The notes beneath the pieces are model-generated. The model saw only the letters and a program-made list of their open reading frames with translations. It had not been told where the DNA came from and did not search any database. 64,000 nt of DNA from the IMG/VR virus record IMGVR_UViG_3300030107_006644, positions 141,518-205,517 of that record; one strand, given 5' to 3'. This document shows positions 15,750 through 58,607 of this stretch, one piece after another (the first letter of the stretch is position 1; the number at the start of each line of letters is the position of its first letter). Both the position numbers and the translations under genes were made by a program.

Positions 15750-15998
15750 TTGACTCAACACAACAAGTTTAATATTGGTGACCTCGTAAAGCTAGTACCG
15801 GCGGCAATAGGGTATCCAATGTTTGATGATGCAAAGGAAGCACTTGGTGTTGGCATTGTTATAGAACAGAGGATGCAGGCTCCAGAATGGGGAGATCCGT
15901 CCGGTATTCCCACCTTAATGTATCGTGTGATGTGGAGTGGTACAAATACGAAAAGATGGGAATTCCCCAGTGATTTAGTTAAAGTCATAGATAAATAG
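15750..15998 (+). CDS. MKVGDLV-family SH3/KOW-like protein
   Basis: FNIGDLVKL...GVGIVIE...YRVMW...DLVKVI. Confidence 0.7.
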   Translation: MTQHNKFNIGDLVKLVPAAIGYPMFDDAKEALGVGIVIEQRMQAPEWGDPSGIPTLMYRVMWSGTNTKRWEFPSDLVKVIDK

Positions 15999-16001
15999 TA
16001 T

Positions 16002-16289
16002 GTGGAGTGCGAACTTACAACTGCTACTGTCGGCATCGGAGATTTGATTAGGTGGGTAAAGCCGCTCTACTATATACAGAATGGTAAAGAGTATACATTA
16101 GAAAACTGGAACTATGCGCTCGTTATTGAGGTTAATATCAAGGTCTACTCTACTTTGGTAGTGCGAAATTTAACCTTGCAACTGCTTGGCGAACATAGCT
16201 CAATGCGTATAGACATATCTCTTGACATGTTGACTGATCTTGGGAAGATAGAGAAATTATGCGAAAGAAAATGGATTTGTATAGGTTGA
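16002..16289 (+). CDS. MKVGDLV-family SH3/KOW-like protein
   Basis: VGIGDLIRW...ALVIEV. Confidence 0.65.
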   Translation: MECELTTATVGIGDLIRWVKPLYYIQNGKEYTLENWNYALVIEVNIKVYSTLVVRNLTLQLLGEHSSMRIDISLDMLTDLGKIEKLCERKWICIG

Positions 16290-16370
16290 GTAGAACTACT
16301 TAAATTAAAGGTTCTCTCGAACCGCCGCGCGAAACTTCGCGGAAAATTTTTCAATGCGAGGTGCCAATGA

Positions 16371-16661
16371 GTGTCAATCAGGAGATTCCGAATCGGAGAT
16401 TACATACGCTGGGAGTCTGGAATCGAGGCATTCAGCGCAAGTGCGTCGGGCATTGTCCACCCAATCGAGTTCAGATACGACTATGGCATCGTGGTAGACA
16501 TAGCAGAAGGCAATCCGAAGGAGAACGCATCGGACGTTATCATCGCGTATTGTGTCGAAAAGAGAGATTGGATTGTTGCTCACGTTGACGATGCAGAATA
16601 TCGCATGGAACTGGTCAGCCGAGCACCAGAAAAGCCCATTGGTAAAGTCGATGGGAGATGA
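16371..16661 (+). CDS. MKVGDLV-family SH3/KOW-like protein
   Basis: FRIGDYIRW...YGIVVDI...MELVS. Confidence 0.7.
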   Translation: MSIRRFRIGDYIRWESGIEAFSASASGIVHPIEFRYDYGIVVDIAEGNPKENASDVIIAYCVEKRDWIVAHVDDAEYRMELVSRAPEKPIGKVDGR

Positions 16662-17049
16662 CAAGACGATAGAAGAGAAGCCGCCTGATGTGTTCGTAGG
16701 CGACATGATAAAGTGGAAGGAAGCCGAGTTCTCATATACGCCAAGCGACTACAAGGTTAAACACTACGTCGGAATAGTCGTAGAGGTGAAGGTGCCGGAA
16801 GCTACAGTGCAGGATATAATGTGGAACATATACTATAGTCACAGCTACGACCCATTGGTAGACGAGTATTACCGCAAGAACTTCTGGGACCAAAGATATG
16901 AAGAGGTGCCATGGATTAAGGTGTTGACTATTCAAGGCAAGACCGGAAAGAAGGTGTTTCGCTACCTTTCGATGGAGGATGAGTTTGAAGTCCTATCGCG
17001 AGCTAGTCTGCTGATCCTGCCAACCACGGAGAAGGAGCATGAAGAGTAA
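16651..17049 (+). CDS. MKVGDLV-family SH3/KOW-like protein with insertion
   Basis: VFVGDMIKW...VGIVVEV...IKVL...FEVLS; start placed at ATG 16651. Confidence 0.65.
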   Translation: MGDDKTIEEKPPDVFVGDMIKWKEAEFSYTPSDYKVKHYVGIVVEVKVPEATVQDIMWNIYYSHSYDPLVDEYYRKNFWDQRYEEVPWIKVLTIQGKTGKKVFRYLSMEDEFEVLSRASLLILPTTEKEHEE

Positions 17050-17269
17050 CCCCGATGCTTATGACATTGGCGATTACGTCGAAATAATGGTGTGTCCGTC
17101 CATTGGTGGCGGTGTGGAAGTCTGCTACGGGATTGTAGTGGCTAGCTCATCAAAAAAAACGAGCTATTTAATATACTTGTTTGACAAAAATCGCTGGAAG
17201 TGGTACAATGATTTTGAGCTTACACTGATGAGCGCAGCGGAAGAGGCAAATGGAACTAGGAAAAAATAG
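17039..17269 (+). CDS. MKVGDLV-family SH3/KOW-like protein
   Basis: YDIGDYVEI...YGIVV...YLIYL...ELTLMS. Confidence 0.7.
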   Translation: MKSNPDAYDIGDYVEIMVCPSIGGGVEVCYGIVVASSSKKTSYLIYLFDKNRWKWYNDFELTLMSAAEEANGTRKK

Positions 17270-17573
17270 CGGCGAAAGGCTACAAGTTTACAAATACACG
17301 GCAGAAGATGAGAACGGACAGATAGTGTTTTACTACACATACCCCGAGAAAAGCGAGAGAATCGTCAAGAGGGTTGAAGACAAGATTAAACAAGATGTGA
17401 TCGTGTTCGATATATTTCCGGGCTTAATCAATGGTGACGAAGAACTAGAAGAGGCAATATGGGTGACAACGCAAATACAAACTCCCATGTATCTTCCGGC
17501 AGGCATGGGCGTAACTATGCATGACTTTGGAACCATACTATACGGAATCGCAGAAGATGACGAAGACTCTTGA
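17250..17573 (+). CDS. Acidic hypothetical protein
   Basis: 107 aa; its stop TGA lies inside the first TTGACA of promoter element P1. Confidence 0.7.
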   Translation: MELGKNSGERLQVYKYTAEDENGQIVFYYTYPEKSERIVKRVEDKIKQDVIVFDIFPGLINGDEELEEAIWVTTQIQTPMYLPAGMGVTMHDFGTILYGIAEDDEDS

Positions 17574-17624
17574 CATGTTGCTGACAACTTTTCCATTGAC
17601 AGGCGGGTCGTGATGAGCTATATT
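17570..17624 (+). promoter_or_regulatory. Triple-box sigma70-type promoter element P1
   Basis: TTGACA 17570, CTGACA 17581, TTGACA 17596, 17 bp, TATATT 17619. Confidence 0.9.
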
Positions 17625-17647
17625 ATTAGGGTAAACAGGAGGAAGCC

Positions 17648-17923
17648 TTGAAGGTTGGAGATTTGGTAACGCTTTCATCTTATGGTAAGCGCATTAACTA
17701 TATGGGTAAGTGCATAGCCCAGCGAAAATATAACGGAGGATTTCGTGGCCCGTTGATTGGGCTGGTTATCGCAAAAGTCGAGCCCACACATTCGTGGGAG
17801 AAGCAAATGAAGTATTCGGTTGCATGGATTGATAACTGCGAGTTCAATCCACAAGGTCGAGATAACTGGGTGAAGTATTTTCACCGCAAAGACCTTAAGA
17901 TGGTCAAAAAAGCAAAGAAGTAA
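17648..17923 (+). CDS. MKVGDLV-family SH3/KOW-like protein
   Basis: MKVGDLVTL...IGLVIA...YSVAW...DLKMV; AGGAGG SD. Confidence 0.8.
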   Translation: MKVGDLVTLSSYGKRINYMGKCIAQRKYNGGFRGPLIGLVIAKVEPTHSWEKQMKYSVAWIDNCEFNPQGRDNWVKYFHRKDLKMVKKAKK

Positions 17924-17933
17924 GGAGATAAAC

Positions 17934-18257
17934 ATGCATAGAACAATGATTATGACAATCGCAACGCTGATGGCAGCAGCAGCATACGCAGATGAACCCC
18001 CAACAGCGGTCGAAGTGCCAGCTACCGCAACGACACAGCCAGTGCGCGTAGTTACAGGTACGGTTGTCGATTCAATGGGCGGATCTGACCTCCACGGGGG
18101 ATGGGTCAAGGTTCATTTGGATGGTCAGCCCGAAGGACTAATCAACACCTTCAGCGATATTGTCTTTCCGCACACCTGTACCACACTCGGTGATAAGTTC
18201 TACATCGTCTTTGGTAGCGTTACAACCAGTATTACATGCGGGGAACCAACCAAGTGA
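17934..18257 (+). CDS. Secreted hypothetical protein
   Basis: Signal peptide ending AAAYA; AAGGAG SD. Confidence 0.7.
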   Translation: MHRTMIMTIATLMAAAAYADEPPTAVEVPATATTQPVRVVTGTVVDSMGGSDLHGGWVKVHLDGQPEGLINTFSDIVFPHTCTTLGDKFYIVFGSVTTSITCGEPTK

Positions 18258-18556
18258 GAAAGAAACTTAACAAAACCGTGGTGTGCGCTGATGGGTTCTC
18301 CATGAGCGTGCAGGCCAATGGCACCGCTTATTGTCATCCTCGTCAGGAGCATGCAGAGCAGTACACGGAGGTCGAGATCGGCTTTCCTAGCGAGGAGGAA
18401 GAGTTGCTGATGGAGTGGGCAGAGAATCCCAGTGAGCCGACCGATACCGTGTATGCGTGGGTGCCTGCTGGACGTGTTTCGCTCGTTATCGCAAAGCATG
18501 GCGGCATGGTGTCGGGGGAACTTCCTCCCGGCATTCCGCGACTGGAAGCCTGTTGA
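18254..18556 (+). CDS. Hypothetical phage protein
   Basis: CADGFSMSVQA...YCHPR...EVEIGFPS; stop lies inside P2 box 1. Confidence 0.75.
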   Translation: MRKKLNKTVVCADGFSMSVQANGTAYCHPRQEHAEQYTEVEIGFPSEEEELLMEWAENPSEPTDTVYAWVPAGRVSLVIAKHGGMVSGELPPGIPRLEAC

Positions 18557-18607
18557 CATTTACTTGACAAAGTTTTCCTTGACTTTGCGCTCACTGTAGA
18601 GTATATT
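18553..18607 (+). promoter_or_regulatory. Triple-box promoter element P2
   Basis: TTGACA 18553, TTGACA 18564, TTGACT 18579, 17 bp, TATATT 18602. Confidence 0.9.
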
Positions 18608-18613
18608 ATTTGT

Positions 18614-18871
18614 ATGAAACGGAAGTTGAACATTGGCGATTTGGTGCGAGTCACCGAGGACACACACGATTCAAGGATGCCTCCCTCACGCACTGGTCTG
18701 ATTGTGAGTCAGGTTTGCGAAGAGGCATGGAATGATGAAAAGGTGCCTGTCGGCGTGTTTAACGTATGGATGACGAACGGTGAAACTCTAAGGTTTCACG
18801 AAATGTTCTTGGTAAAGGTCGAAAGGGTCGAAAGGGTCGAAAGGAACGAAGATGAGAAGAGAGAAGATTAA
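18614..18871 (+). CDS. MKVGDLV-family SH3/KOW-like protein, probably leaderless
   Basis: LNIGDLVRV...TGLIVS...FNVWM; ATG 7 nt after the -10 hexamer, no SD. Confidence 0.75.
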   Translation: MKRKLNIGDLVRVTEDTHDSRMPPSRTGLIVSQVCEEAWNDEKVPVGVFNVWMTNGETLRFHEMFLVKVERVERVERNEDEKRED

Positions 18872-18948: not shown

Positions 18949-19098
18949 ATGGAAATCGGTACTATTGTTCAACACTTTGTGTGTGATTATCGAGGTCGAA
19001 TCGTGGCCATGGCCAATGGTCTGGTTCACGTCCTTGTCGATGGCGTTGGCGTTGTGGAAGATCGTGTTGAGAACTTTGTCTTGTCCGAAGCGGCTTGA
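18949..19098 (+). CDS. MKVGDLV-family SH3/KOW-like protein (49 aa, not in the ORF track)
   Basis: MEIGTIVQH...GRIVA...VHVLV; GGAG SD; stop lies in P3 box 1. Confidence 0.7.
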   Translation: MEIGTIVQHFVCDYRGRIVAMANGLVHVLVDGVGVVEDRVENFVLSEAA

Positions 19099-19149
19099 CA
19101 TTTTCTTGACAGGAAACCACTTGACGAATGAGCGTTTGGTGAGTATATT
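19095..19149 (+). promoter_or_regulatory. Triple-box promoter element P3
   Basis: TTGACA 19095, TTGACA 19106, TTGACG 19121, 17 bp, TATATT 19144. Confidence 0.9.
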
Positions 19150-19175
19150 ATATGGGTAAGCAGGAGAAAGCAAAC

Positions 19176-19779: not shown

Positions 19780-19917
19780 ATGGCTAAGAAGAAAATCAAA
19801 ACCATCAAACCTCGCAACTGGCTGGCGCTTCATGCCCGTCGTCGTCGCGGTGGTCCGATGAGGGATCGAAAGAAGGCAGCGAACAAGAAGGCATGCCGTG
19901 GGAGAGTCCATGCATAA
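19780..19917 (+). CDS. Small highly basic protein (45 aa, not in the ORF track)
   Basis: MAKKKIKTIKPRNWLALHARRRRGGPMRDRKKAANKKACRGRVHA; GGAG SD. Confidence 0.65.
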   Translation: MAKKKIKTIKPRNWLALHARRRRGGPMRDRKKAANKKACRGRVHA

Positions 19918-20230
19918 GAAGCTGATCGGAGCACTCGTTCGGTTCTTGCCTGTTGGCAACTATCATGAGTTTCACAATGCTGTGGGTATGGTGACTTCGC
20001 ATAATAAACCTTCACATGTTCGCGTCAAGTGGATCAAGCCTGTTCACTATGCCGTTCACAGCGAACACTACAAGTTTCATGGACCGGCGACGGTTTCGGA
20101 CTTTGACCTCGACCGGCTTGAAGTGATCAGTAGCGTACTTAGTGACGAGCAGCTTGAAAGCGTTGTCGGTGGTATGAGTCCAGAAAGTTTTAGTAACTGG
20201 CGAGCGGAGAAGTTAAATGAAAGTCGGTGA
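19910..20230 (+). CDS. MKVGDLV-family SH3/KOW-like protein
   Basis: LIGALVRF...VGMVT...VRVKW...RLEVIS; ends NESR overlapping the next start. Confidence 0.7.
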   Translation: MHKKLIGALVRFLPVGNYHEFHNAVGMVTSHNKPSHVRVKWIKPVHYAVHSEHYKFHGPATVSDFDLDRLEVISSVLSDEQLESVVGGMSPESFSNWRAEKLNESR

Positions 20231-20387
20231 TTTGGTTTGGATTGATTGGAATAGTTACCCAGAAGAGGCGTTCACTGCATCCGGCGTTATCATTAAGGAT
20301 GAGGGATTTAGCTTCTTTAGGGTCTTGTTTAACGGTGAGCAGAGGGTTTTCCATTCTGATTATCTGGAGGCACTCAATGAAGCATAG
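20217..20387 (+). CDS. MKVGDLV-family SH3/KOW-like protein (56 aa, not in the ORF track)
   Basis: MKVGDLVWI...SGVIIK...FRVLF...YLEALNEA. Confidence 0.8.
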   Translation: MKVGDLVWIDWNSYPEEAFTASGVIIKDEGFSFFRVLFNGEQRVFHSDYLEALNEA

Positions 20388-20565
20388 TGGTGCGCCGAGT
20401 GTGGGCGATCTCGTTGTGGCGCTCTATGACGAGCAGCGAGGACTCAAGTGTATCGGCCTTGTTTTAGATTGCCGAGGTATTGAGTGTCGAATCAAGTGGG
20501 CTTCGCGCAGCGACCCTATTGGGTGGTGGAGAAGAGATCAGTTAAGGGTTGTGCATGCCGCTTGA
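20377..20565 (+). CDS. MKVGDLV-family SH3/KOW-like protein
   Basis: PSVGDLVVA...IGLVLD...RIKW...QLRVV; GGAGG SD inside the upstream gene. Confidence 0.75.
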   Translation: MKHSGAPSVGDLVVALYDEQRGLKCIGLVLDCRGIECRIKWASRSDPIGWWRRDQLRVVHAA

Positions 20566-20618: not shown

Positions 20619-20822
20619 ATGAAAGTCGGTGATCTCGTTATTATGCCTGATCAGAAGCTGCTGAAGGATGAGCCTGTACCTATTGCCGTCGTGCTGCAAA
20701 CAAAGCATGATGGCATCAACCGAGGCACAAGCCATAAGCGTGTTAGGGTTCACTGGATTCAAGATAATGAAAGATCATGGGAGCCTGTGAAGTGGCTGGA
20801 GGTAATCAGTGCGGTTAGTTAG
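20619..20822 (+). CDS. MKVGDLV-family SH3/KOW-like protein
   Basis: MKVGDLVIM...VRVHW...WLEVIS. Confidence 0.8.
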   Translation: MKVGDLVIMPDQKLLKDEPVPIAVVLQTKHDGINRGTSHKRVRVHWIQDNERSWEPVKWLEVISAVS

Positions 20823-21141: not shown

Positions 21142-21334
21142 CTTGGTAAGATGGTGCGGAAAAATCTGCGTTGTTACGGAGGTTTATGAAAGCAAGATAT
21201 GGCGCACCGACAAAATGGGAAAGATGGTGCGTTGGGGAGAGATTGAACCCGAGCCTTTCGCCCGAATCTTGCTTGGCGATGAGCTGCGTGGTGTGCCGCA
21301 AACGGACCTAGAGGTAGTCAGTGGGTGCAGCTAA
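21128..21334 (+). CDS. MKVGDLV-family SH3/KOW-like protein
   Basis: MKIGDLVRW...DLEVVS. Confidence 0.8.
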   Translation: MKIGDLVRWCGKICVVTEVYESKIWRTDKMGKMVRWGEIEPEPFARILLGDELRGVPQTDLEVVSGCS

Positions 21335-21573
21335 ATGTAACCATACTTCCCGGCGATCTGCTATGGCAGTTGCGACCTCCGCACGGAGTCTGCCTATTGT
21401 TGGAGATAAAAGACCTTCCACAAGACGTTCGCTCAATGAAAGGCTGGATTTCTCAAGACTATCCAGTATACAGACTATTACATCAAGCTGGGTTCATTTT
21501 TGAGGATCCCCATTACTATTACGAGAAGTTAAACCTTAGCCGACAGGAGAAACAAGATGGCAACTTGTATTAA
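21325..21573 (+). CDS. Divergent SH3/KOW-like protein
   Basis: ILPGDLLW...VCLLLE...YRLL. Confidence 0.6.
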   Translation: MQLNVTILPGDLLWQLRPPHGVCLLLEIKDLPQDVRSMKGWISQDYPVYRLLHQAGFIFEDPHYYYEKLNLSRQEKQDGNLY

Positions 21574-21754
21574 ATGTGAAGAAGAATATAACGATAAGCG
21601 ACTAGCCCTAGGCTACCGCACATGCTTGGACTGTGGCGGTCGCGATGCCAACAGGATCAGTCGAGCGAGAACAGCACAGGTTCTCAAGTCAATGACGCCA
21701 AATCATTATGAAGGTAGTCCCGAAGACCTGTTCGATAAGCCCGACGAGTCTTGA
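21557..21754 (+). CDS. C4 zinc-finger protein (DksA/TraR-finger-like)
   Basis: CIKCEEEYNDKRLALGYRTCLDCG; stop lies in P4 box 1. Confidence 0.65.
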   Translation: MATCIKCEEEYNDKRLALGYRTCLDCGGRDANRISRARTAQVLKSMTPNHYEGSPEDLFDKPDES

Positions 21755-21805
21755 CATTTACTTGACAACTGCACCCTTGACTTTCCCGGTCAGGGGTGCT
21801 ATATT
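21751..21805 (+). promoter_or_regulatory. Triple-box promoter element P4
   Basis: TTGACA 21751, TTGACA 21762, TTGACT 21777, 17 bp, TATATT 21800. Confidence 0.9.
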
Positions 21806-21832
21806 ATAGGGGTAATCAGCAAGGAGTATACA

Positions 21833-22591: not shown

Positions 22592-22856
22592 CTTAGCATT
22601 TTCAGGAGAGAAGGTATCGCAGGACGAGGTGAAGAAAGCGTTGATGGCTATTTTAGCCGAGGACTGGCCCGAAGCCTTTACCGTAGACTTTCATTCAGAC
22701 GGTGGAGGATCGGTGGTTCGCGCCATCGTCGAATGTCACAACACCGACGATCATTTAGACAAGTCCTTGACTGACAAGCTGCCACTTAAGTTTATGGGAT
22801 GGCGACTTGTGATATTAAAGGTTCCTATTGGTCATGTTGGAGTCTTTTACTCCTGA
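22584..22856 (+). CDS. Hypothetical protein
   Basis: 90 aa; stop lies in P5 box 1. Confidence 0.7.
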   Translation: MANLAFSGEKVSQDEVKKALMAILAEDWPEAFTVDFHSDGGGSVVRAIVECHNTDDHLDKSLTDKLPLKFMGWRLVILKVPIGHVGVFYS

Positions 22857-22907
22857 CATTCTCTTGACAACTTTGCTATTGACTTCGACCCTCGCAGGTG
22901 CTATATT
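22853..22907 (+). promoter_or_regulatory. Triple-box promoter element P5
   Basis: CTGACA 22853, TTGACA 22864, TTGACT 22879, 17 bp, TATATT 22902. Confidence 0.9.
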
Positions 22908-22932
22908 ATATGAGTAACCAAGGAGAGTACAC

Positions 22933-23277
22933 ATGGCCTATCTCACGAAAGACGATCTCGTAATCATTCGCACAAGCGACACCACCATTCAGGCGCGTGT
23001 TGTAGACATGCAGTTTCGGCGCTTCAAGCGTTCATGGCAGGACAAGAAGACTGGTGAGTGGAAATACCGATGGAAGTCCGTGCCTTATGCGATTTGCGAG
23101 TGCTTCATCGGCGCTCCTGTCGGTACAGAGTTCTTGATTCCCGGCTATAAGCTGAAGAGTGAGGTCAAGAACGGAGAAAGTCTGCTTGTTCTCCGCGACA
23201 AGTATGCAGCCGAGTTCGATGGCGAGTGGGTAAGTAAGATGTTGGCCGAAAGCAAGGCCAAGCGAGCTAGTGCGTGA
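22933..23277 (+). CDS. Hypothetical protein, possibly a divergent SH3-like fold
   Basis: AAGGAG SD; LTKDDLVII...ARVVDM. Confidence 0.75.
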   Translation: MAYLTKDDLVIIRTSDTTIQARVVDMQFRRFKRSWQDKKTGEWKYRWKSVPYAICECFIGAPVGTEFLIPGYKLKSEVKNGESLLVLRDKYAAEFDGEWVSKMLAESKAKRASA

Positions 23278-23438
23278 AAGTCGGTGATCTGGTAAAGTAT
23301 AGACGCAACGCGGTAGACGCTGGTGTGGGCATCGCTCTCATCGAGGGTGCCAATGCGCGGTGGACGATTCTGTGGTCAACCGGCGTGAGTGAGATCGTTA
23401 GAGAAGAAAACTTGAAGGTGATCAATGAAAGTCGGTGA
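23274..23438 (+). CDS. SH3/KOW-like array gene 1 (54 aa, not in the ORF track)
   Basis: MKVGDLVKY...GVGIALI...WTILW...NLKVINESR. Confidence 0.8.
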   Translation: MKVGDLVKYRRNAVDAGVGIALIEGANARWTILWSTGVSEIVREENLKVINESR

Positions 23439-23604
23439 TATAGTAACTTGTAGCTACGGTATTGGCATGGTGGCAGCAAAGGCTTTGCAGCATGACGGCC
23501 CGCTATTCCGTATCATATTCAACGCTTTCCCAGAGCGCAAGATATGGGTTCGCCCGTGGGAACTGGAGGTAATCAGTGCAAGTCGGCGATCTGGTCAAGT
23601 TTGA
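23425..23604 (+). CDS. SH3/KOW-like array gene 2 (59 aa, not in the ORF track)
   Basis: MKVGDIVTC...GIGMVA...FRIIF...ELEVISASR. Confidence 0.8.
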   Translation: MKVGDIVTCSYGIGMVAAKALQHDGPLFRIIFNAFPERKIWVRPWELEVISASRRSGQV

Positions 23605-23764
23605 AACTAACTCATGGGTGATGCAGCGGGACGACTATGCAAATCCCGGTGTGATCGTGGAAGACGTGTCTGGCGTGAGCACCCGACGCTACCGAGTCAT
23701 GTGGGCCGATCAGAGAATCACGGTCGAACATGAAGGTTATCTTAAACCTTTGACATCTTCTTGA
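23576..23764 (+). CDS. SH3/KOW-like array gene 3
   Basis: MQVGDLVKF...PGVIVE...YRVMW; stop lies in P6 box 2. Confidence 0.8.
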   Translation: MQVGDLVKFETNSWVMQRDDYANPGVIVEDVSGVSTRRYRVMWADQRITVEHEGYLKPLTSS

Positions 23765-23803
23765 CAAGATCCGCTTGACTTCCATGCTCGCCCATGCTAT
23801 ATT
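23750..23803 (+). promoter_or_regulatory. Triple-box promoter element P6
   Basis: TTGACA 23750, TTGACA 23761, TTGACT 23775, 17 bp, TATATT 23798. Confidence 0.9.
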
Positions 23804-23825
23804 ATATGGGTAATCAGGGAGAGAT

Positions 23826-24008
23826 ATGATTAAGGTTGGCGATTTGGTAAGGATAGCGGAGCCCTTCATGGGCTATCAGGGTCAAGTGGGTATCGTTACA
23901 AAGATCCCGCTGACCGAGCGTGGCATGTGGGCTATCCTGCTCACATCCGGCGAGCTTATCGCCACGAGGCTTATGTCACGTATGGAGGTCGTCAATGAAA
24001 GTCGGTAA
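23826..24008 (+). CDS. SH3/KOW-like array gene 4
   Basis: MIKVGDLVRI...VGIVT...WAILL...MEVVNESR. Confidence 0.8.
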   Translation: MIKVGDLVRIAEPFMGYQGQVGIVTKIPLTERGMWAILLTSGELIATRLMSRMEVVNESR

Positions 24009-24174
24009 TCTAGTAAGTGTGAAGCGCACTCATGGCCGAGAGCCTGTCATCGGTGTTATCATCGAGATCAAGGAAGACGAACACAATCGAGTCGCACTTG
24101 TTGAGTCTATTAAAGGTAACTATCGGCTTTATGCTAACCCTCTCGACATCGAGGTGATAAGTGACTGTCGGTGA
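23995..24174 (+). CDS. SH3/KOW-like array gene 5
   Basis: MKVGNLVSV...IGVIIE...DIEVISDCR. Confidence 0.8.
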   Translation: MKVGNLVSVKRTHGREPVIGVIIEIKEDEHNRVALVESIKGNYRLYANPLDIEVISDCR

Positions 24175-24379
24175 TCTCGTTAAAGTTACACGCGCATCCA
24201 TCGGCGTGCCTGTTGGGACATTGGGTCTAATCATGTCCTCGCATGAAACCCGTGGAGACTATGATACTGCGTCGGGCGAGAAGATTCACATACTGCAGCT
24301 TATTGGAGGTGATTTTGCATGGGGGCAGAACCGTCGTTATTTGGGGAGAGACTTGGAGGTAATCAATGCAAGTCGGTGA
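24161..24379 (+). CDS. SH3/KOW-like array gene 6
   Basis: MTVGDLVKV...LGLIMS...DLEVINASR. Confidence 0.8.
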   Translation: MTVGDLVKVTRASIGVPVGTLGLIMSSHETRGDYDTASGEKIHILQLIGGDFAWGQNRRYLGRDLEVINASR

Positions 24380-24539
24380 TTTGGTGAGGAACCGTAACTC
24401 TGAGGGCGGCCTGCTGGGTATTATTGTGGGCTGGCAGGATCTCAGTTATGAGGGTTTGCAGCCTATTATACACTGGTTCGACGGGCGCACAAGTTGGATT
24501 ATGGCGCATCGCGTGGAGGTCATCAATGCAAGTCGGTAG
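24366..24539 (+). CDS. SH3/KOW-like array gene 7 (57 aa, not in the ORF track)
   Basis: MQVGDLVRN...LGIIVG...IIHW...RVEVINASR. Confidence 0.8.
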   Translation: MQVGDLVRNRNSEGGLLGIIVGWQDLSYEGLQPIIHWFDGRTSWIMAHRVEVINASR

Positions 24540-24735
24540 TCTATACAGGTTTGACCGTATCAACGGTCACACAACAACCGTGAATGGCCGGTTGGCGATT
24601 TATTTGGGCGAAGCCTTCATCCGTCGAGACGATGGCGTGACCATCGAGAACCACAGGGTTTTGATGGTTGGGAACACAAGCCCGACGATCATTGATCGCG
24701 GCCTGCTGAAGCACATGCGAGAGGTGACAGCATGA
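24526..24735 (+). CDS. SH3/KOW-like array gene 8
   Basis: MQVGSLYRF...LAIYLG...HRVLM...MREVTA. Confidence 0.75.
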   Translation: MQVGSLYRFDRINGHTTTVNGRLAIYLGEAFIRRDDGVTIENHRVLMVGNTSPTIIDRGLLKHMREVTA

Positions 24736-24905
24736 AAGTCGGTGATCTGGTAACACAGTCGCATGCCGGGAGTAATACAGGCATCATCATAGCCATCGAT
24801 CCCGAAGAAATCGGAGATTCAAAAGAAGTGCTGGTATTCTGGGACGATGGCGAAGTTTGGAACCATTCGATGCGGTTTCTGGAGGTGATCAGTGCAAGAT
24901 CCTAG
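24732..24905 (+). CDS. SH3/KOW-like array gene 9 (57 aa, not in the ORF track)
   Basis: MKVGDLVTQ...TGIIIA...VLVFW...FLEVISARS. Confidence 0.8.
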   Translation: MKVGDLVTQSHAGSNTGIIIAIDPEEIGDSKEVLVFWDDGEVWNHSMRFLEVISARS

Positions 24906-25092
24906 ACCTTGGAAGGTGGGCGATCTAGTCAGGATTAAACGCACTGGTGAGACTGCGTTGATATTGTACGTTGCCGATGCGTCCATCGGCTGCAAAATGA
25001 TTAAGATTCATACGGGCGAGTATTTCGCCCCTTGGAAGTTAAACCTTGTTAGCAAGGGAGCTAACAAGGTCGAAGAAGGGAGAGAGGAATGA
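24892..25092 (+). CDS. SH3/KOW-like array gene 10
   Basis: WKVGDLVRI...TALILY...KLNLVS. Confidence 0.8.
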   Translation: MQDPRPWKVGDLVRIKRTGETALILYVADASIGCKMIKIHTGEYFAPWKLNLVSKGANKVEEGREE

Positions 25093-25442: not shown

Positions 25443-25762
25443 AGTTAAACCTTGAAGCTGCACCCGTCGAGGTTGTCTGGCCGCCGTGTCTCTCGACTAT
25501 CGGAGGCAAGCGATATGCGATCAGCGGCAACGTCTGGATCGAAGTACCGATGTCCACCGTGTTCGACGATTTGCCTCGATATATGGTCTGTGAGGCCCGC
25601 AAAGCCCCTGTGACGGCTCCGTGTCAGTCATGGGAGGTACAGGGTAGCAAAGGCAACAAGTACGCTGTGAGGCTGTCTGAGGGTGTCTGGTCCTGCTCAT
25701 GTCCCGGCTACTCGTTCCGTCGCAAATGTCGCCATATTGAGGAAAAGAAGATTGAAGTTTAA
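25439..25762 (+). CDS. SWIM zinc-finger protein
   Basis: GSKGNKYAV...WSCSCPGYSFRRKCRHI. Confidence 0.8.
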   Translation: MKLNLEAAPVEVVWPPCLSTIGGKRYAISGNVWIEVPMSTVFDDLPRYMVCEARKAPVTAPCQSWEVQGSKGNKYAVRLSEGVWSCSCPGYSFRRKCRHIEEKKIEV

Positions 25763-25937
25763 GGTTGGTGACTTGGTGACTTGGAGGAATGGCCTTGCTC
25801 AACCTCCCGGTATCATATTAAAGGTTTCCACCGAAAGGCGTGCGTACCTTATTTGCTTTCCGCATAAGAGCGTCACCCAGTGGTGTCCCGACGAGTTCTT
25901 GAACCAGTTGACAACCTCTTTACAAGAAAATCCTTGA
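25752..25937 (+). CDS. MKVGDLV-family SH3/KOW-like protein
   Basis: FKVGDLVTW...PGIILK...YLICF; stop lies in the -35 box of P7. Confidence 0.75.
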   Translation: MKFKVGDLVTWRNGLAQPPGIILKVSTERRAYLICFPHKSVTQWCPDEFLNQLTTSLQENP

Positions 25938-25962
25938 CTTTGGGCCTGAAAGACTATATATT
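25908..25962 (+). promoter_or_regulatory. Triple-box promoter element P7
   Basis: TTGACA 25908, TTTACA 25919, TTGACT 25934, 17 bp, TATATT 25957. Confidence 0.88.
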
Positions 25963-25986
25963 ATAGGGGTAACAAGGAGAGATACC

Positions 25987-26181: not shown

Positions 26182-26231
26182 CATTTCCCTGACATTTTAG
26201 ACTTGACTTTCTCTCTTCCCTGTGAGATAAT
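26178..26231 (+). promoter_or_regulatory. Triple-box promoter element P8
   Basis: TTGACA 26178, CTGACA 26189, TTGACT 26203, 17 bp, GATAAT 26226. Confidence 0.85.
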
Positions 26232-26254
26232 ACAGGGGTAATCAAGGAGATCCC

Positions 26255-27058
26255 ATGCCCCGTGTGACCTACGCCGACCGCTTCGCTGCCCTTCTCGCCC
26301 GCCCGCTATCCAGTAGCGACCGGAGATTCTGCGAAAGTCTGCGAGACTTCTACCAGCGCAAAGGTCGCCTGACCTCTGGGCGTGTGCGGTGTTTTAAGCA
26401 GCTTGAGGAGCGTTACAGTGCCGAGAGGCTAGCCGAGGCTGCAGAGCGCGGCGGGCCGATGCTCAAGCGATTGAGCGGCCTTCTGCCCCGCGTGGAGGGC
26501 AACAAATGGGCAAGCGGATTCGTGATGAGTCTATCCCAACAAGTTCAAGGAGGGCGCAATCTCTCCGACAAGCAGATTACAATGCTTGAAAAGATCGAGC
26601 GAGAAAACAGTGATGAAGCAATCGCAGCACGACAGACATGGCATCTTGATTATGATGACGACAAGCGTTTGCGTGCGATGGTCGCGGCTCGATACTACCG
26701 GGAGAGCGGAGGCTACTTCCGCGATCTGGTTAACAAGATTCTTGAAAACCCTGACTTCGTGCCGTCCCAGCGGCAGTACAGGTCTATCACCGAGAACAAG
26801 TATGCACAGAAGGTCTTGGATGCCCATTTCGCCGCGCCTAAGTACGCGGTCGGGTCATTCGTCGCGATGCGCTCCAGCGCACCGTGGGCATGCCGTAGCG
26901 GGGCCGGAAACAAGCCTTGCGTTGTCATCCAGACCGATGCCGCTCCTGTCGTCAGTGCAGCCCGAGGAGTCAAGCGTTACAAGGTGCTGCCCATCGGATC
27001 GGCAAGGCCGATCATTGTCGAGGAGCGACACATTAAAGCTGCGAGAGGACTTAAATAA
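26255..27058 (+). CDS. Hypothetical protein with C-terminal SH3/KOW-like domain; paralog of 1638..2255
   Basis: RYY..GGYF..L..KIL.NPDFVPS..QY..IT.NKYA.KVL...YAVGSFV...IVEERHIK. Confidence 0.8.
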   Translation: MPRVTYADRFAALLARPLSSSDRRFCESLRDFYQRKGRLTSGRVRCFKQLEERYSAERLAEAAERGGPMLKRLSGLLPRVEGNKWASGFVMSLSQQVQGGRNLSDKQITMLEKIERENSDEAIAARQTWHLDYDDDKRLRAMVAARYYRESGGYFRDLVNKILENPDFVPSQRQYRSITENKYAQKVLDAHFAAPKYAVGSFVAMRSSAPWACRSGAGNKPCVVIQTDAAPVVSAARGVKRYKVLPIGSARPIIVEERHIKAARGLK

Positions 27059-27061
27059 CCA

Positions 27062-27228: not shown

Positions 27229-27266
27229 CCCCTTCAACTTAAACCTTTGAACTTTTGAGAAAACAC

Positions 27267-28651: not shown

Positions 28652-29212
28652 ATGACTGACACGCCGACCACTTCTGACCTTCGCGCCCTCAAGCTGACCG
28701 AGGACGAATGGCACTCACTCATGCACATGGGTGAGTTTGATCCTATTCGCGCTCACATGGATATGCTTGTGCTGGCTGGGCTTGCCGTGCGAACGCACAT
28801 TCACCCGCCCGAATGGGATCTGACCGAGGCCGGTCACGCAGCCTGCAACGCGATTGATCTCATCCTCGACTGGGATGACTTTGTATTCGTAGGCGACGGA
28901 GAGGACACCGAGCCTTTCGGCGTTATTCAGCTTGAGAACGCTTCTGATGCCTCTGATACGGTCTTCCTGAATGGTGAGCCTATCGAGCGCAGCGAAGCCG
29001 TAGAACTGGCTTCTGAGGCCCCTAAGCGCATCGGCGTAGGATCGCTTGTGCGCCACCAGCACCACGGCGAAGGTCTAGTGACCGATCATTTCATGTGGGA
29101 TGGCGACTGGGGCGGCTTCAGGATTAAACTTCTTAAACCTTCCCAAACTGGCGCTACAACCTCGATTACCGAGTTTAGTGACCGCGCCGATTCCTTTGAA
29201 CTTGTAAGTTAA
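28652..29212 (+). CDS. Acidic hypothetical protein with C-terminal SH3/KOW-like domain
   Basis: IGVGSLVRHQHHGEGLVT...FRIKL...FELVS. Confidence 0.75.
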   Translation: MTDTPTTSDLRALKLTEDEWHSLMHMGEFDPIRAHMDMLVLAGLAVRTHIHPPEWDLTEAGHAACNAIDLILDWDDFVFVGDGEDTEPFGVIQLENASDASDTVFLNGEPIERSEAVELASEAPKRIGVGSLVRHQHHGEGLVTDHFMWDGDWGGFRIKLLKPSQTGATTSITEFSDRADSFELVS

Positions 29213-40214: not shown

Positions 40215-40466
40215 ATGAAAAAAAACGAAAGTCTTGGACATAGCGCAACAAAGAAATTTGGAATTGGAGATCTTGTAACGTGGAAGGACCTATCTGGTCC
40301 TCAAAAATTGGGTATAATAAAAGAAATATACACAAAAATGCAAGGAGGGAGACCCGTGGCATATGCCCGGGTTTTTCTAGTTAAAGATGACAAAAAACAA
40401 TCCCTTTTGCACGAAGAAGACATAATTATTATAAAGCTACGGTTGGTTTCCAAGCGATCTCGATGA
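40215..40466 (+). CDS. MKVGDLV-family SH3/KOW-like protein
   Basis: FGIGDLVTW...LGIIKE...ARVFL...LRLVS. Confidence 0.7.
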   Translation: MKKNESLGHSATKKFGIGDLVTWKDLSGPQKLGIIKEIYTKMQGGRPVAYARVFLVKDDKKQSLLHEEDIIIIKLRLVSKRSR

Positions 40467-57588: not shown

Positions 57589-57593
57589 ACCAC

Positions 57594-57622
57594 TTGACTT
57601 CAGCCCTATAATAGGGTATATT
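57594..57622 (+). promoter_or_regulatory. Single sigma70-type promoter for tRNA-Leu
   Basis: TTGACT-17-TATATT. Confidence 0.75.
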
Positions 57623-57630
57623 ATAAGTGA

Positions 57631-57715
57631 GGCTGAGTGGTGGAATCGGTATACACAGGAGACTTAAAATCTCCCGCCTTAAGGCTTGCGGGTTCGAGTC
57701 CCGCCTCAGCTACCA
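57631..57715 (+). tRNA. tRNA-Leu(TAA)
   Basis: Class II cloverleaf; loop CT-TAA-AA; CCA. Confidence 0.95.
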
Positions 57716-57731
57716 TTTTACAGGAAAATAA

Positions 57732-57920
57732 ATGCTTTTACTAATATTGCTAGCTTATAATCACGGACAACCAGAGTTACCACAATGTACTATTGATCGG
57801 TGCGAAGCGCAATATTGCGTAGTAGAGACACCGGAAGGAAGTGTTGATGTTTCACGAAAACCTCACTACAGAGAGGGTATGTTAATTGAGTGTCCTTTTT
57901 GGCTAATTGATCCGACTTAA
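57732..57920 (+). CDS. Small secreted Cys-containing protein
   Basis: CTIDRCE...C.VETPEG...EG..IECP. Confidence 0.65.
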   Translation: MLLLILLAYNHGQPELPQCTIDRCEAQYCVVETPEGSVDVSRKPHYREGMLIECPFWLIDPT

Positions 57921-57923
57921 ATA

Positions 57924-58050
57924 CGCTGCTCCCGTACAGCAGATGAAGTGGCGTTCCTCTAACGATATGCAGGCCATCATAGGGAAGTTGACATAGATTG
58001 CATTACACGGTCTGTGAAACTATCCACGAAATTGGTGCTGGGGAGCAAGC
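57924..58050 (+). ncRNA. Candidate structured RNA abutting the tRNA-Lys 5' end
   Basis: Long irregular closing stem GCTCCC/GGGAGC, CAGCA/TGCTG, GTGG/CCAC; no credible ORF. Confidence 0.45.
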
Positions 58051-58125
58051 GGGTCAATAGCTCAATGGTAGAGCACCGGGCTTTTAACCCGTAGGCTCTG
58101 GGTTCGAATCCCAGTTGACCCACCA
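58051..58125 (+). tRNA. tRNA-Lys(TTT)
   Basis: Canonical cloverleaf; loop CT-TTT-AA; CCA. Confidence 0.95.
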
Positions 58126-58152
58126 TTGAAGAGAATATGAGAAGATTAATAC

Positions 58153-58227
58153 GCGAATGTAGCTCAGTGGTAGAGCCCCACGTTGCCAACGTGGCTGTCG
58201 CTGGTTCGAATCCAGTCATTCGCTCCA
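58153..58227 (+). tRNA. tRNA-Gly(GCC)
   Basis: Canonical cloverleaf; loop TT-GCC-AA; U73; CCA. Confidence 0.95.
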
Positions 58228-58331
58228 ATCATGCGCTGTTCTGCTCGCATTATAAGCGGAACGCGGCTGCCGGTGGTCACGTAGGCAGGGGTTTCCGGTC
58301 ATCCTAGTTCGCGGCAGAAAACCGGTTTTTT

Positions 58332-58607
58332 ATGAAATATAAAGTAAATGATGTAGTGTTGGTTAAGTCTCCTGCGGGGAATGCAATTCCGCATATACAT
58401 GTTAAATTACTTAAAAGAATTGTGGTAAAAGCTAGCAAGGGTAGGAGCATGGATTGGCCCGGCTATTCTGGCTGGGAAGCGACTCCTGTCTATCAAAAAG
58501 AAATTGATATTCTTCGTAAAAAATGGAGCATTCCCTTTACTAAGCCGGAAAAAGACTTGACATTTGTCTATGACCGAGATATACTACATAAGGAGAAGAA
58601 AAAATGA
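58332..58607 (+). CDS. SH3/KOW-like hypothetical protein
   Basis: MKYKVNDVVLV...VKLLKR. Confidence 0.65.
   Translation: MKYKVNDVVLVKSPAGNAIPHIHVKLLKRIVVKASKGRSMDWPGYSGWEATPVYQKEIDILRKKWSIPFTKPEKDLTFVYDRDILHKEKKK

What the first reader, a model, noticed from the sequence alone, without database searches (positions are those of the whole stretch)
15750..58607. About 30-member expansion of tiny MKVGDLV (SH3/KOW-like) proteins
Seen: (K/I/V)GD(L/Y/M)V - G(I/V)(I/V) - (V/I)xW - LEV(I/V)S recurs at 15750, 16002, 16371, 16651, 17039, 17648, 18614, 18949, 19910, 20217, 20377, 20619, 21128, 21325, the ten array genes, 25752, 35130, 40215 and 58332, and as C-terminal modules of 1638, 26255 and 28652. 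Beta-strand residues are conserved and loops vary widely; several members are under 60 aa and missing from the ORF track. Established: KOW/Tudor/SH3 barrels bind proteins or RNA (NusG, ribosomal proteins). Inference: a diversified binder library (anti-defence or host-takeover decoys) on one scaffold.
Basis: partly seen in the sequence, partly recalled or inferred. Interest (0 to 1): 0.65.

Follow-up and report, generated by a model that had tools for sequence, protein, structure and literature searches.

The report
Shuffled small beta-barrel cassettes, marine jumbo phage
A 205-kb uncultured marine phage carries about 23-29 copies of an undescribed 55-90-residue SH3-like beta-barrel protein in its promoter-dense, probably early, region. 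The copies are joined by a conserved 14-base gene overlap that probably also lets related phages swap them as cassettes; what the proteins bind is still unknown.

Summary
The window is the last 64 kb of a 205,517-bp viral record. An HMM finds 17 members at E<1e-7. Profile-profile comparison adds 6 at 95% or more and 6 at 84-93%, including the three C-terminal modules. Sites 16002 and 58332 are ambiguous and 18949 fails. All lie on the + strand, and none is in the other 141 kb.

Two independent AlphaFold models (pLDDT 91 and 92.5) give the same five-strand SH3-like barrel, nearest to KOW, Tudor, PWWP and CarD. Pfam, PHROGs and NCBIfam have no matching family.

New here: most array genes overlap by 14 nt. 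One roughly 25-35-nt junction encodes the upstream C-terminus (LEVI[NS]ESR*), a GGAGG ribosome-binding site, the start codon and the downstream MKVGD. Part of the motif conservation is therefore DNA-level.

Related genomes carry 22-33 copies. Cassette order differs between close relatives, with breakpoints in junctions and in repeated sigma70-type promoters. Orthologues are under purifying selection.

Function is inferred: diversified early-expressed binding modules. It is a new variant of phage hyperplastic-region cassette shuffling.

The parts
15750..15998 (+). family member, 82 aa, stand-alone (TTG start)
   Evidence: HMM E 1.8e-9; core-only HMM E 5e-5
16371..16661 (+). divergent member, 96 aa
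   Evidence: hhalign 96.3% over 54 columns
16651..17049 (+). probable member with long insertions, 132 aa
   Evidence: hhalign 85.5% over 35 columns; HMM E 0.002-0.1
17039..17269 (+). divergent member, 76 aa
   Evidence: hhalign 97.4%; HMM E 0.0085
17648..17923 (+). member, 91 aa, basic (pI 10), directly behind a promoter repeat
   Evidence: HMM E 1.7e-9; promoter at 17596
18614..18871 (+). member, 85 aa, with a VERVERVER tail, behind a promoter repeat
   Evidence: HMM E 7e-8; promoter at 18579
19910..20230 (+). divergent member, 106 aa; ends in NESR* and overlaps the next member by 14 nt
   Evidence: hhalign 97.4%; sequence
20217..20387 (+). member, 56 aa, acidic
   Evidence: HMM E 1.6e-9
20377..20565 (+). 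member, 62 aa; 11-nt overlap with the previous member
   Evidence: hhalign 98.5%; HMM E 0.009
20619..20822 (+). member, 67 aa, the one modelled; its junction-type 3' end starts the unrelated gene 20809-21141
   Evidence: HMM E 2.7e-16; AF2 pLDDT 91.2; orthologues P0001-P0024
21128..21334 (+). member, 68 aa
   Evidence: HMM E 4e-9
21325..21573 (+). possible divergent member, 82 aa
   Evidence: hhalign 84% but over the N-terminal 25 columns only
   Evidence: hhalign 86.3% over 48 columns
23274..23438 (+). array gene 1, 54 aa
   Evidence: HMM E 4e-11
23425..23604 (+). array gene 2, 59 aa
   Evidence: HMM E 4e-13
23576..23764 (+). array gene 3, 62 aa
   Evidence: HMM E 2e-11
23826..24008 (+). array gene 4, 60 aa, first gene behind the promoter at 23775
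   Evidence: HMM E 8e-11; dN/dS 0.17 against L077
23995..24174 (+). array gene 5, 59 aa
   Evidence: HMM E 5e-16; dN/dS 0.13
24161..24379 (+). array gene 6, 72 aa
   Evidence: HMM E 3e-11; dN/dS 0.05
24366..24539 (+). array gene 7, 57 aa
   Evidence: HMM E 2e-14
24526..24735 (+). array gene 8, 69 aa, of a distinct subfamily (MQVGSLYRF...YLGEAFIRRDDG)
   Evidence: hhalign 95.7%; AF2 from its own orthologues gives pLDDT 92.5 and the same strand order
24732..24905 (+). array gene 9, 57 aa; 100% identical protein sits in another operon of L077
   Evidence: HMM E 1e-15
24892..25092 (+). array gene 10, 66 aa
   Evidence: HMM E 1e-9
25752..25937 (+). member, 61 aa (TTG start)
   Evidence: HMM E 8e-13
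35130..35372 (+). outlying member, 80 aa
   Evidence: HMM E 0.005; hhalign 95.4%
40215..40466 (+). outlying member, 83 aa, basic
   Evidence: HMM E 4e-9
2043..2255 (+). probable barrel module at the C-terminus of the 205-aa protein 1638-2255
   Evidence: hhalign 89% over 48 columns
26846..27058 (+). probable barrel module at the C-terminus of the 267-aa protein 26255-27058 (paralogue of 1638)
   Evidence: hhalign 90% over 49 columns
29030..29212 (+). probable barrel module at the C-terminus of the 186-aa protein 28652-29212
   Evidence: hhalign 93% over 33 columns
23412..23444 (+). junction cassette: C-terminus LKVINESR*, ribosome-binding site, ATG and MKVGD of the next gene; 14-nt overlap
23563..23595 (+). 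junction sequence CTGGAGGTAATCAGTGCAAGTCGGCGATCTGGT; here a point change (GGCGA instead of GGTGA) removes the TGA, so gene 2 runs on and overlaps gene 3 by 29 nt
23982..24014 (+). junction cassette, 14-nt overlap
24148..24180 (+). junction cassette, 14-nt overlap
24353..24385 (+). junction cassette TTGGAGGTAATCAATGCAAGTCGGTGATTTGGT; the most widely shared piece in marine metagenome contigs
24513..24545 (+). junction cassette, 14-nt overlap
24879..24911 (+). junction cassette, 14-nt overlap
17568..17637 (+). 70-nt promoter repeat (TTGACA boxes, TTGAC-N18-TATATTAT)
   Evidence: (D1)
18551..18620 (+). promoter repeat
19093..19162 (+). promoter repeat
21749..21818 (+). promoter repeat, with a 12-pair stem-loop across the spacer
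22851..22927 (+). promoter repeat ahead of 22933 and array genes 1-3
23775..23823 (+). promoter repeat ahead of array genes 4-10
   Evidence: (D3)
25906..25982 (+). promoter repeat closing the region

Best explanation
The family is lineage-specific and undescribed. Each member is a stand-alone small SH3-like beta-barrel protein of 55-90 aa. The genes lie as exchangeable cassettes in the promoter-dense, probably early, 'hyperplastic' region of an uncultured marine jumbo phage whose terminase is distantly T4-like.

Shown:
- The proteins share one five-strand barrel with a conserved hydrophobic core and highly variable loops and charge.
- In arrays, consecutive genes overlap by 14 nt. One conserved junction of about 25-35 nt holds the end of gene n (L-E-V-I-[NS]-E-S-R-stop), a GGAGG ribosome-binding site, the start codon and the first residues of gene n+1 (M-K-V-G-D). 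The stop TGA lies inside the G-D codons.
- Close relatives carry the same cassettes in a different order and number. Breakpoints fall in these junctions and in repeated sigma70-type promoter cassettes.
- Orthologous cassettes are under purifying selection.

Inferred:
- The junction gives whichever cassette lands downstream a strong translation start, coupled to the upstream gene.
- The junction also acts as a seam of short homology. Recombination between co-infecting or related phages can swap, add or delete whole cassettes there without damaging either protein.
- The proteins themselves most likely act early in infection as single-domain binding modules, each recognising a different host or competitor macromolecule (protein or peptide more likely than nucleic acid). 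The phage population would then hold a large, reshuffled repertoire of host-takeover or counter-defence factors.
For: - Family and copy number. Complete relatives have 22 and 33 copies clustered in one region. The cultured phages with the nearest terminases have none.
- Fold: pLDDT 91.2 and 92.5 with the same strand order, from independent alignments. Nearest solved folds are Spt5 KOW (Z 8.0), Tudor (7.2), PWWP (6.9) and CarD (6.8).
- Junction anatomy. Exactly 14 nt of overlap occurs in 415 of 844 neighbouring member pairs in 126 loci. Glu in the LEV motif is 91% with the junction tail and 59% without.
- Shuffling: the window has 23826-23995-24161-24366-24526-24732-24892. L077 has 23826-24526-23995-24161-three others-24892. 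The 24732 protein is 100% identical but sits in another operon. Copy number differs among the near-identical contigs L001-L003.
- Metagenome contigs: junction bins are tens- to hundred-fold deeper than cassette bodies, and the flanks are heterogeneous.
- Promoters: TTGAC-N18-TATATTAT occurs 14 times on the + strand (0.09 expected). Eight of the 9 exact copies in the genome lie in 10 kb around the family.
- Selection: dN/dS is 0.05-0.33 against L077 orthologues.
- Diversity: pI 4.2-10. There are 863 unique domains in 1.14 Mb of related loci and 9,415 representatives of 50%-identity clusters at E<=0.001.
- No reverse transcriptase in the genome, so diversification is not retroelement-driven.
Against: - No binding partner, expression time or phenotype is known. 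No RNA run holds the region and the host is unknown.
- 'Early' rests only on sigma70-like consensus promoters.
- Purifying selection on orthologues shows no sign of an arms race at the point-mutation level.
- Fold matches are generic (Z 6-8, many tied), so the fold does not choose between protein, peptide and nucleic-acid ligands.
- The recombination role of the junction is inferred from comparison of two genomes and from contig patterns, not observed. The 126 loci were selected for having a junction, which inflates the 14-nt statistic.
- The 9,415 figure includes more distant SH3-fold proteins such as DUF1918-type repeats.
Confidence: 0.55

Rival explanations
1. The proteins are modulators of transcription or translation that bind nucleic acid or RNA polymerase. 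They would be KOW-, CarD- or Mfd-RID-like barrels that dock on host RNA polymerase, the ribosome or RNA and redirect gene expression early in infection.
For: - The top structural neighbours include Spt5/NusG KOW (Z 8.0), CarD N-terminal domain (Z 6.8), Mfd RID (Z 6.6), CdnL and UvrD C-terminus bound to the RNAP lobe.
- Weak profile matches exist to uL24 and NusG KOW (E about 0.01).
- The N-terminal GDxV...G motif resembles the KOW motif.
Against: - All these matches are tied with Tudor, PWWP, PsaE and R67 DHFR.
- No Pfam KOW or CarD_TRCF match was found in 120 members.
- A quarter of the family has pI below 5 and the median is 6.5, which is not what uniform nucleic-acid binders show.
- Twenty to thirty very different paralogues per genome are hard to reconcile with a single conserved docking site.
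Confidence: 0.2
2. The paralogues assemble with each other. Translationally coupled neighbours would form homo- or hetero-oligomers (rings or filaments of small barrels, as Sm/LSm or R67 DHFR do), so the array would encode one composite machine.
For: - The 14-nt and 4-nt overlaps suggest coupled, balanced synthesis.
- Seven coupled genes follow the promoter at 23775.
- The adjacency of 23995 and 24161 is kept in L077.
- R67 DHFR, a tetramer, is among the structural neighbours (Z 7.1).
Against: - The number, order and identity of cassettes differ between close relatives, which does not suit a fixed-stoichiometry complex.
- Many members stand alone behind their own promoter.
- No complex prediction was run.
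Confidence: 0.1
3. The genes are largely neutral passengers of a self-propagating DNA repeat. The junction and promoter cassettes would multiply by recombination, and the short ORFs between them would have little or no function.
For: - The junction is much more widespread than any single cassette body in marine contigs.
- Part of the protein motif conservation is explained by the overlap.
Against: - dN/dS is 0.05-0.33 in orthologues, and identical proteins occur in different contexts.
- A well-packed fold is confidently predicted for two divergent members.
- Core positions far from the junction are conserved.
- Stand-alone members without any overlap keep the GDLV and G-I-V motifs.
Confidence: 0.07
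4. The likeness is only a repeated N-terminal and C-terminal DNA motif attached to unrelated short ORFs, so there is no real protein family.
For: Most of the HMM score comes from the first 8 and the last 8 residues. The core alone gives weak E-values for many members.
Against: - The core-only profile still finds 10 members at E<0.01, against a best of 1.3 elsewhere in the genome.
- hhalign covers 48-54 of 55 columns for divergent members.
- Two models from separate alignments give the same fold.
Confidence: 0.03

Closest known systems
PeSL-mediated modular shuffling in the hyperplastic regions of T4-type phages (Arbiol et al. 2010, PMC2839356; Comeau et al. 2014, PMC4122927)
   Same: - Clusters of small, non-essential-looking genes of unknown function.
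- Dense, repeated strong sigma70-like early promoter cassettes.
- Insertions, deletions and replacements between close relatives, with breakpoints in the repeated cassettes.
- The terminase of this phage is distantly T4-like.
   Different: - Here a second seam lies inside coding sequence: the 14-nt overlap junction, which carries the ribosome-binding site, the start and both protein termini.
- The shuffled genes belong to one protein family, not to unrelated ORFans.
- A terminator stem-loop as part of the promoter cassette was not established.
- Mini-circles were not tested.
Lineage-specific expansions of small domains in jumbo phages, for example about 35 zinc-ribbon copies in Bacillus phage G (Iyer et al. 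2021, PMC7824862)
   Same: Tens of copies of one small domain in one jumbo phage lineage, with function guessed from the fold.
   Different: - The fold is different (SH3-like barrel).
- The family is spread over many uncultured marine phages.
- Organisation in overlapping arrays has not been reported for the phage G zinc ribbons in the passage read.
SH3-fold small beta-barrels: KOW (NusG/Spt5, uL24), Tudor/PWWP/chromo, CarD/Mfd RID, PsaE, R67 DHFR, DUF1918 (Rv2302)
   Same: - Five-strand barrel of 50-65 residues.
- Z 6-8, rmsd 1.8-2.8 A over 50-58 residues.
- N-terminal G-D-x-V strand as in KOW.
- Weak profile matches.
   Different: - No member-wide match to any Pfam, NCBIfam or PHROG model.
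- No aromatic cage or catalytic residues could be shown.
- Stand-alone, cytoplasmic and phage-encoded.
Host-range multigene families and 'genomic accordions' of large DNA viruses (own knowledge; not checked in the papers read)
   Same: Many paralogues of a binding scaffold clustered near a genome end, and a repertoire that varies between strains.
   Different: Copies here are old and diverged (median identity about 32%, no near-identical pairs). Variation arises by cassette exchange, not by recent amplification.

Membership tests
KOW domain (Pfam PF00467 and relatives) | Significant match to the KOW profile | tested here: not met
   No KOW family matched at E<=1 in 10 members. One of 120 members touches KOW6_SPT51-2 at E 1e-4. 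Profile against PDB sequences gives uL24 and NusG at E about 0.01 only.
KOW domain (Pfam PF00467 and relatives) | SH3-like five-strand barrel superposable on NusG/Spt5 KOW | tested here: met
   Spt5 KOW gives Z 8.0, rmsd 1.8 A over 54 residues. NusG gives Z 6.5-6.7.
Chromo-like / Tudor 'royal' superfamily (Pfam clan CL0049) | SH3-fold barrel similar to Tudor, PWWP or chromo barrels | tested here: met
   Tudor Z 7.2, PWWP Z 6.9, MRG15 chromo Z 6.7. Foldseek TM is 0.57-0.65. NSD3 PWWP gives E 1.6e-4 with profile A1 but 0.03 with the deeper profile A2.
Chromo-like / Tudor 'royal' superfamily (Pfam clan CL0049) | Aromatic cage for methylated lysine or arginine | not testable with these tools
   Conserved Trp at profile columns 38 and 46. 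Their strand positions suggest core packing, but model coordinates could not be inspected.
CarD_TRCF RNAP-interacting domain (PF02559) | Profile match, and contact with the RNA polymerase beta lobe | tested here: not met
   No Pfam match. Only fold-level similarity: CarD Z 6.2-6.8 and Mfd RID Z 6.6. Binding was not tested.
DUF1918 (PF08940, Rv2302-like) | Profile match over the gathering score | tested here: not met
   One of 120 members at E 0.005. A distant five-repeat protein found by the family profile does match it (3.6e-16). Rv2302 gives E 0.028.
PeSL-type modular shuffling system | Repeated sigma70-like early promoter cassettes concentrated in a variable region | tested here: met
   70-nt repeats D1 and D3. 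Fourteen sites against 0.09 expected. Eight of the 9 exact genome copies lie within 10 kb.
PeSL-type modular shuffling system | Breakpoints between close relatives fall in the repeated cassettes | tested here: met
   blastn segments between L077 and the window end in promoter repeats and in junctions. The gene order comparison agrees.
PeSL-type modular shuffling system | Stem-loop terminator as part of the cassette | tested here: inconclusive
   One promoter copy has a 12-pair stem-loop (21771-21799). Terminator-like sites are not enriched overall: 14 found against 11.2 expected.
Diversity-generating retroelement targets | Reverse transcriptase in the genome | tested here: not met
   No RVT_1 match in the 205-kb record.
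Lineage-specific domain expansion in jumbo phages | Tens of paralogues per genome, confined to one lineage | tested here: met
   23-29 copies here. Two complete relatives have 22 and 33. The cultured phages with the nearest terminases have 0.

The most novel reading that the evidence does not exclude
The 14-nt overlap junction would be a dedicated coding 'seam': a portable unit of ribosome-binding site, start codon and both protein termini. It would let a whole clade of marine jumbo phages trade small-barrel cassettes seamlessly by homologous recombination. The result would be an integron-like, population-wide combinatorial library of early binding proteins (thousands of variants), from which each phage genome draws 20-30 to match its host's defences.
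Probability: 0.3. Interest if true: 0.8.

Novelty: new variant of a known kind. Interest (0 to 1): 0.62.

Why it matters
If the reading holds, this is one of the largest uncharacterised small-protein families of marine viruses. The family profile finds thousands of representatives of 50%-identity clusters (an upper bound, as some are more distant SH3-fold proteins), and no Pfam, PHROG or NCBIfam model covers it.

It would show how a phage can keep a big repertoire of binding modules evolvable. The translation signals and the recombination seam are written into the overlapping ends of the genes, so cassettes can be swapped without loss of expression or fold.

It also carries a caution for motif-based reading. 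The most conserved 'protein' motifs are partly ribosome-binding site, start and stop signals of the neighbouring gene.

Practically, the family is a ready-made natural library on a 55-residue scaffold. It can be screened for inhibitors of bacterial defence or host functions.

Tried and rejected
- The search for related loci with alignment A1 failed because no stretch was conserved enough. A DNA pattern for the junction was used instead.
- tblastn of member 20619 against 50,697 phage records gave no match at E<=1. The cultured phages with the closest terminases lack the family.
- Pfam, PHROGs and NCBIfam gave only scattered single-member weak hits.
- The N-terminal parts of the three fusion proteins and the neighbouring genes gave no functional clue.
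- Host assignment failed. The junction occurs in MAGs labelled Halobacteriovorax, Flavobacteriales, Legionellales, Peribacter and Rubritalea. These are mutually inconsistent and most simply explained as mis-binned phage contigs.
- Expression could not be checked. No RNA run holds the region.
- 'Joints' between junction copies in metagenome contigs were not accepted as deletion variants. Their sides are only 19-33 letters, and the tool warns that such joints arise from repeats. Only the excess of junction sequence with heterogeneous flanks was used.
- Diversification by a retroelement was rejected.
- A recent tandem duplication ('accordion') was rejected. No paralogue pair is close.
- dN/dS between paralogues was not attempted, since synonymous sites are saturated. 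Several orthologue pairs were also saturated.

Full report
**Context**

The window is bases 141,518-205,517 of a 205,517-bp IMG/VR virus record that CheckV rates complete. All long ORFs are on the + strand and GC skew is positive throughout.

The window also encodes a GroEL-type chaperonin, an M23 peptidase domain in a 1,746-aa protein, a MoxR-like ATPase with a VWA/DUF2201 partner, asparagine synthase and PIN-PhoH.

The large terminase is 45% identical to that of Flavobacterium phage immuto, 41% to Microcystis phage Mel-JY01 and 31% to T4-like cyanophages. The element is therefore an uncultured jumbo myovirus-type phage on a far branch of the T4-like terminase tree. DNA holders of the region are marine and seawater metagenomes.

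Yes.

- A motif scan and then an HMM seeded on the array genes picked out the listed ORFs.
- After enlarging the profile with relatives from other contigs, 17 window ORFs score E<1e-7. Every weaker hit down to E about 1 is also a + strand ORF of the window. The best hit on the opposite strand or in the other 141 kb of the genome is E=2.4.
- For the weak candidates I built small alignments from their own orthologues and compared them with the family profile.
  - 95.4-98.5%: 16371, 17039, 19910, 20377, 24526 and 35130.
  - 84-93%: 16651, 21325, 22394 and the C-terminal parts of 1638, 26255 and 28652.
  - Twenty unrelated neighbouring genes treated the same way reach at most 9.3%.
  - 18949 (8%) is at control level. 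16002 (42%), 58332 (30%) and 2556 (18%) are undecided.
- The count is therefore 23 firm and 6 probable members. 'About 30' is a fair description, but nothing is supported beyond 40466.
It fails to refute. A profile of columns 9-51 only, built solely from other phages' sequences, still finds 10 window members at E<0.01, against a best of 1.3 elsewhere in the genome. The termini do carry most of the score.

**Fold**

- Member 20619, modelled with the 19 window paralogues as its alignment, gives pLDDT 91.2 and strands at 6-8, 22-34, 37-46, 51-56 and 61-64.
- The oddest array gene, 24526, lacks both GD and LEVIS. It was modelled from its own 16 orthologues only, and gives pLDDT 92.5 with the same order of five strands.
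- Exhaustive structural comparison puts both among SH3-fold small barrels.
  - 20619: Spt5 KOW Z 8.0 (rmsd 1.8 A, 54 residues), PsaE 7.5, Tudor 7.2, R67 DHFR 7.1, PWWP 6.9.
  - 24526: CarD 6.8, Mfd RID 6.6, KOW 6.0.
- These values are tied and lie in the range the tool calls 'a common arrangement'. They name the fold, not a family or function.
- Foldseek against PDB agrees (CdnL, PWWP, Tudor; E 0.04-0.15).
- Sequence profiles reach PWWP and KOW only weakly.
- No Pfam, PHROG or NCBIfam model covers the members. The nearest predicted viral structures and ESM Atlas clusters are all unnamed viral proteins.

**The junction**

Reading the DNA at gene boundaries shows that six neighbouring pairs in the array overlap by exactly 14 nt, and two pairs just upstream do so as well (19910 with 20217, and 20619 with the unrelated gene at 20809). 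The other array seams overlap by 4 nt (24526 with 24732) or 29 nt (23425 with 23576, where GGCGA replaces GGTGA and removes the stop).

The sequence is a near-constant CTG GAG GTN ATC ART GMA AGT CGG TGA.

- In the upstream frame it reads L-E-V-I-N/S-E/A-S-R-stop.
- Shifted by one base, it reads ATG AAA GTC GGT GAT = M-K-V-G-D.
- GGAGGT lies 5 nt upstream of the start codon.
- The upstream stop TGA lies inside the downstream G-D codons.

The pattern has six copies within 3 mismatches in the window, against none in 100 shuffles, and forms repeat families D2, D4 and D5.

In 126 related loci, 415 of 844 neighbouring member pairs overlap by exactly 14 nt and 41 by 4 nt. These loci were chosen for having a junction, so the share is inflated.

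Part of the 'protein' conservation is therefore nucleotide-level. Glu of LEV (the GAG of the ribosome-binding site) is 91% in genes with the junction tail and 59% in those without. Stand-alone members use varied codons for K-V-G-D where overlapped ones use AAAGTCGGTGA.

G-D-L-V, G-[ILV]-[VI] and V-x-W stay conserved without any overlap, so they are true protein features.

The same junction also starts a non-family gene at 20809.

**Promoters**

A 70-nt repeat with up to three TTGACA-like boxes and TTGAC-N18-TATATTAT occurs 14 times on the + strand of the window, against 0.09 expected. None is on the - strand.

Eight of the nine exact copies in the whole genome lie between window 17.6 and 27.7 kb.

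The genome has no sigma70-family gene. The region therefore looks like a block of host-polymerase (early-type) transcription units. This is an inference from consensus, not from data.

**Relatives**

- Orthologues of 20619 occur on marine contigs of up to 193 kb.
- Their neighbourhoods are syntenic and full of family members with the same junction.
Many are on 185-293-kb contigs.
- Those loci hold 1,018 HMM hits, 863 of them unique, and up to 27 per locus.
- Two complete relatives have 22 and 33 copies, each clustered in one region. Immuto and Mel-JY01 have none.
- A profile search of 1.84 billion cluster representatives returns 9,415 proteins at E<=0.001.
  - Most of the top hits are 51-75-aa single-domain proteins.
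  - A few are two-domain fusions.
  - Some are long multi-repeat proteins that belong to more distant SH3-fold groups such as DUF1918, so the number is an upper bound for the family proper.

**Evolutionary mode**

- Within the window the paralogues are old: 14-38% identity to 20619 in the alignment, a median of about 32% pairwise, and no close pair.
- Orthologues in the closest relative (L077, a 200,760-bp genome) are up to 100% identical, with dN/dS of 0.05-0.33 where dS is not saturated.
- Order differs between the two genomes.
  - Window: 23826-23995-24161-24366-24526-24732-24892.
  - L077: 23826-24526-23995-24161-three unrelated members-24892.
  - The 24732 cassette (97.7% nucleotide identity, 100% protein identity) sits behind a different promoter. 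A 24366-like cassette lies elsewhere.
- blastn segments end in junctions or promoter repeats.
- The near-identical contigs L001-L003 differ by whole cassettes.
- In four other marine metagenomes, the two junction-containing bins at 23412-23444 and 24353-24385 are tens- to hundred-fold deeper than the cassette bodies. Their loose ends have low consensus, meaning many different flanks.
- There is no reverse transcriptase.

**Interpretation**

Shown:
- one scaffold;
- extreme diversification;
- purifying selection;
- the overlap junction;
- cassette-level rearrangement at repeated seams.

Inferred:
- The junction supplies a strong, probably coupled, translation start to any downstream cassette.
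- It also serves as the homology for seamless exchange. [quoted passage not shown]
- The proteins are early, single-domain binders with different targets.

The wide spread of charge (pI 4.2-10) and the loop diversity fit many different targets better than one nucleic-acid site. The KOW/CarD-like rival cannot be excluded. An oligomeric-assembly reading and a 'selfish repeat' reading are less likely, for the reasons given under the rivals.

As a kind, lineage-specific expansion of a small domain in a jumbo phage has precedent in the roughly 35 zinc ribbons of phage G (PMC7824862).

**Limits**

- There is no host, no expression data and no experiment.
- Model coordinates could not be inspected, so conserved surface patches were not mapped.

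Noticed in passing
window 17568-17637, 18551-18620, 19093-19162, 21749-21818, 22851-22927, 23775-23823, 25906-25982, 26203-26251, 27704-27734: A 50-70-nt promoter-like repeat with up to three TTGACA boxes, TTGAC-N18-TATATTAT and a GGGGTAATCA...GGAG leader. One copy (21771-21799) folds into a 12-pair stem-loop across the spacer. It resembles the PeSL cassettes of T4-type phages.
   Followed up: partly
window 20809-21141: A 110-aa gene that is not in the family starts at the GTG of a family-type junction at the 3' end of member 20619. The junction therefore also serves foreign cassettes.
   Followed up: partly
window 18814-18849: Three tandem 9-bp units (AAGGGTCGA) encode VERVERVER in the acidic tail of member 18614.
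   Followed up: no
window 26000-32000: A GC-richer block (54-56% against about 45-49%) has almost no GC skew. It holds the paralogous pair 1638/26255-type proteins, a zinc-knuckle protein (27778), a MoxR-like AAA_5 ATPase (29324) and a DUF2201 metallopeptidase/VWA protein (30478). The same gene set is syntenic in relatives.
   Followed up: partly
window 25373-25762: A 129-aa protein with a SWIM zinc finger (E 6e-4) lies in the same operon as array genes 4-10, just upstream of member 25752.
   Followed up: no
window 34-1332, 59911-61500, 61765-63078: Auxiliary genes: a GroEL-type chaperonin, glutamine-dependent asparagine synthase, and a PIN-PhoH fusion.
   Followed up: no
window 33457-35091: A 544-aa protein has two or more HTH_17/MerR/excisionase-like helix-turn-helix domains, directly upstream of outlying member 35130.
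   Followed up: no
window 40539-46355: A 1,938-aa protein whose residues 45-142 are 41% identical to a region annotated as nicotinamide mononucleotide adenylyltransferase in Flavobacterium phage immuto. The rest has no match in cultured phages. It lies directly downstream of outlying member 40215.
   Followed up: no
P0030, P0033, P0038 (metagenome proteins): Natural two-domain fusions of the family (126-129 aa), as expected if a junction loses its stop or frame offset. Long proteins with 5-16 related repeats also exist (for example P0028, which matches DUF1918).
   Followed up: partly
L127-L135 (genome contigs): The phage junction occurs in MAGs labelled with five unrelated bacterial groups. 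These are probably phage contigs binned into MAGs, so such bins should not be used for host calls.
   Followed up: partly
window, general: Strong GGAGG ribosome-binding sites and TTGACA/TATAAT-type promoters argue against a Bacteroidota host, although the nearest cultured terminase and GroEL relatives are Flavobacterium and Bacteroides phages. This inference rests on general knowledge of Bacteroidota expression signals.
   Followed up: no
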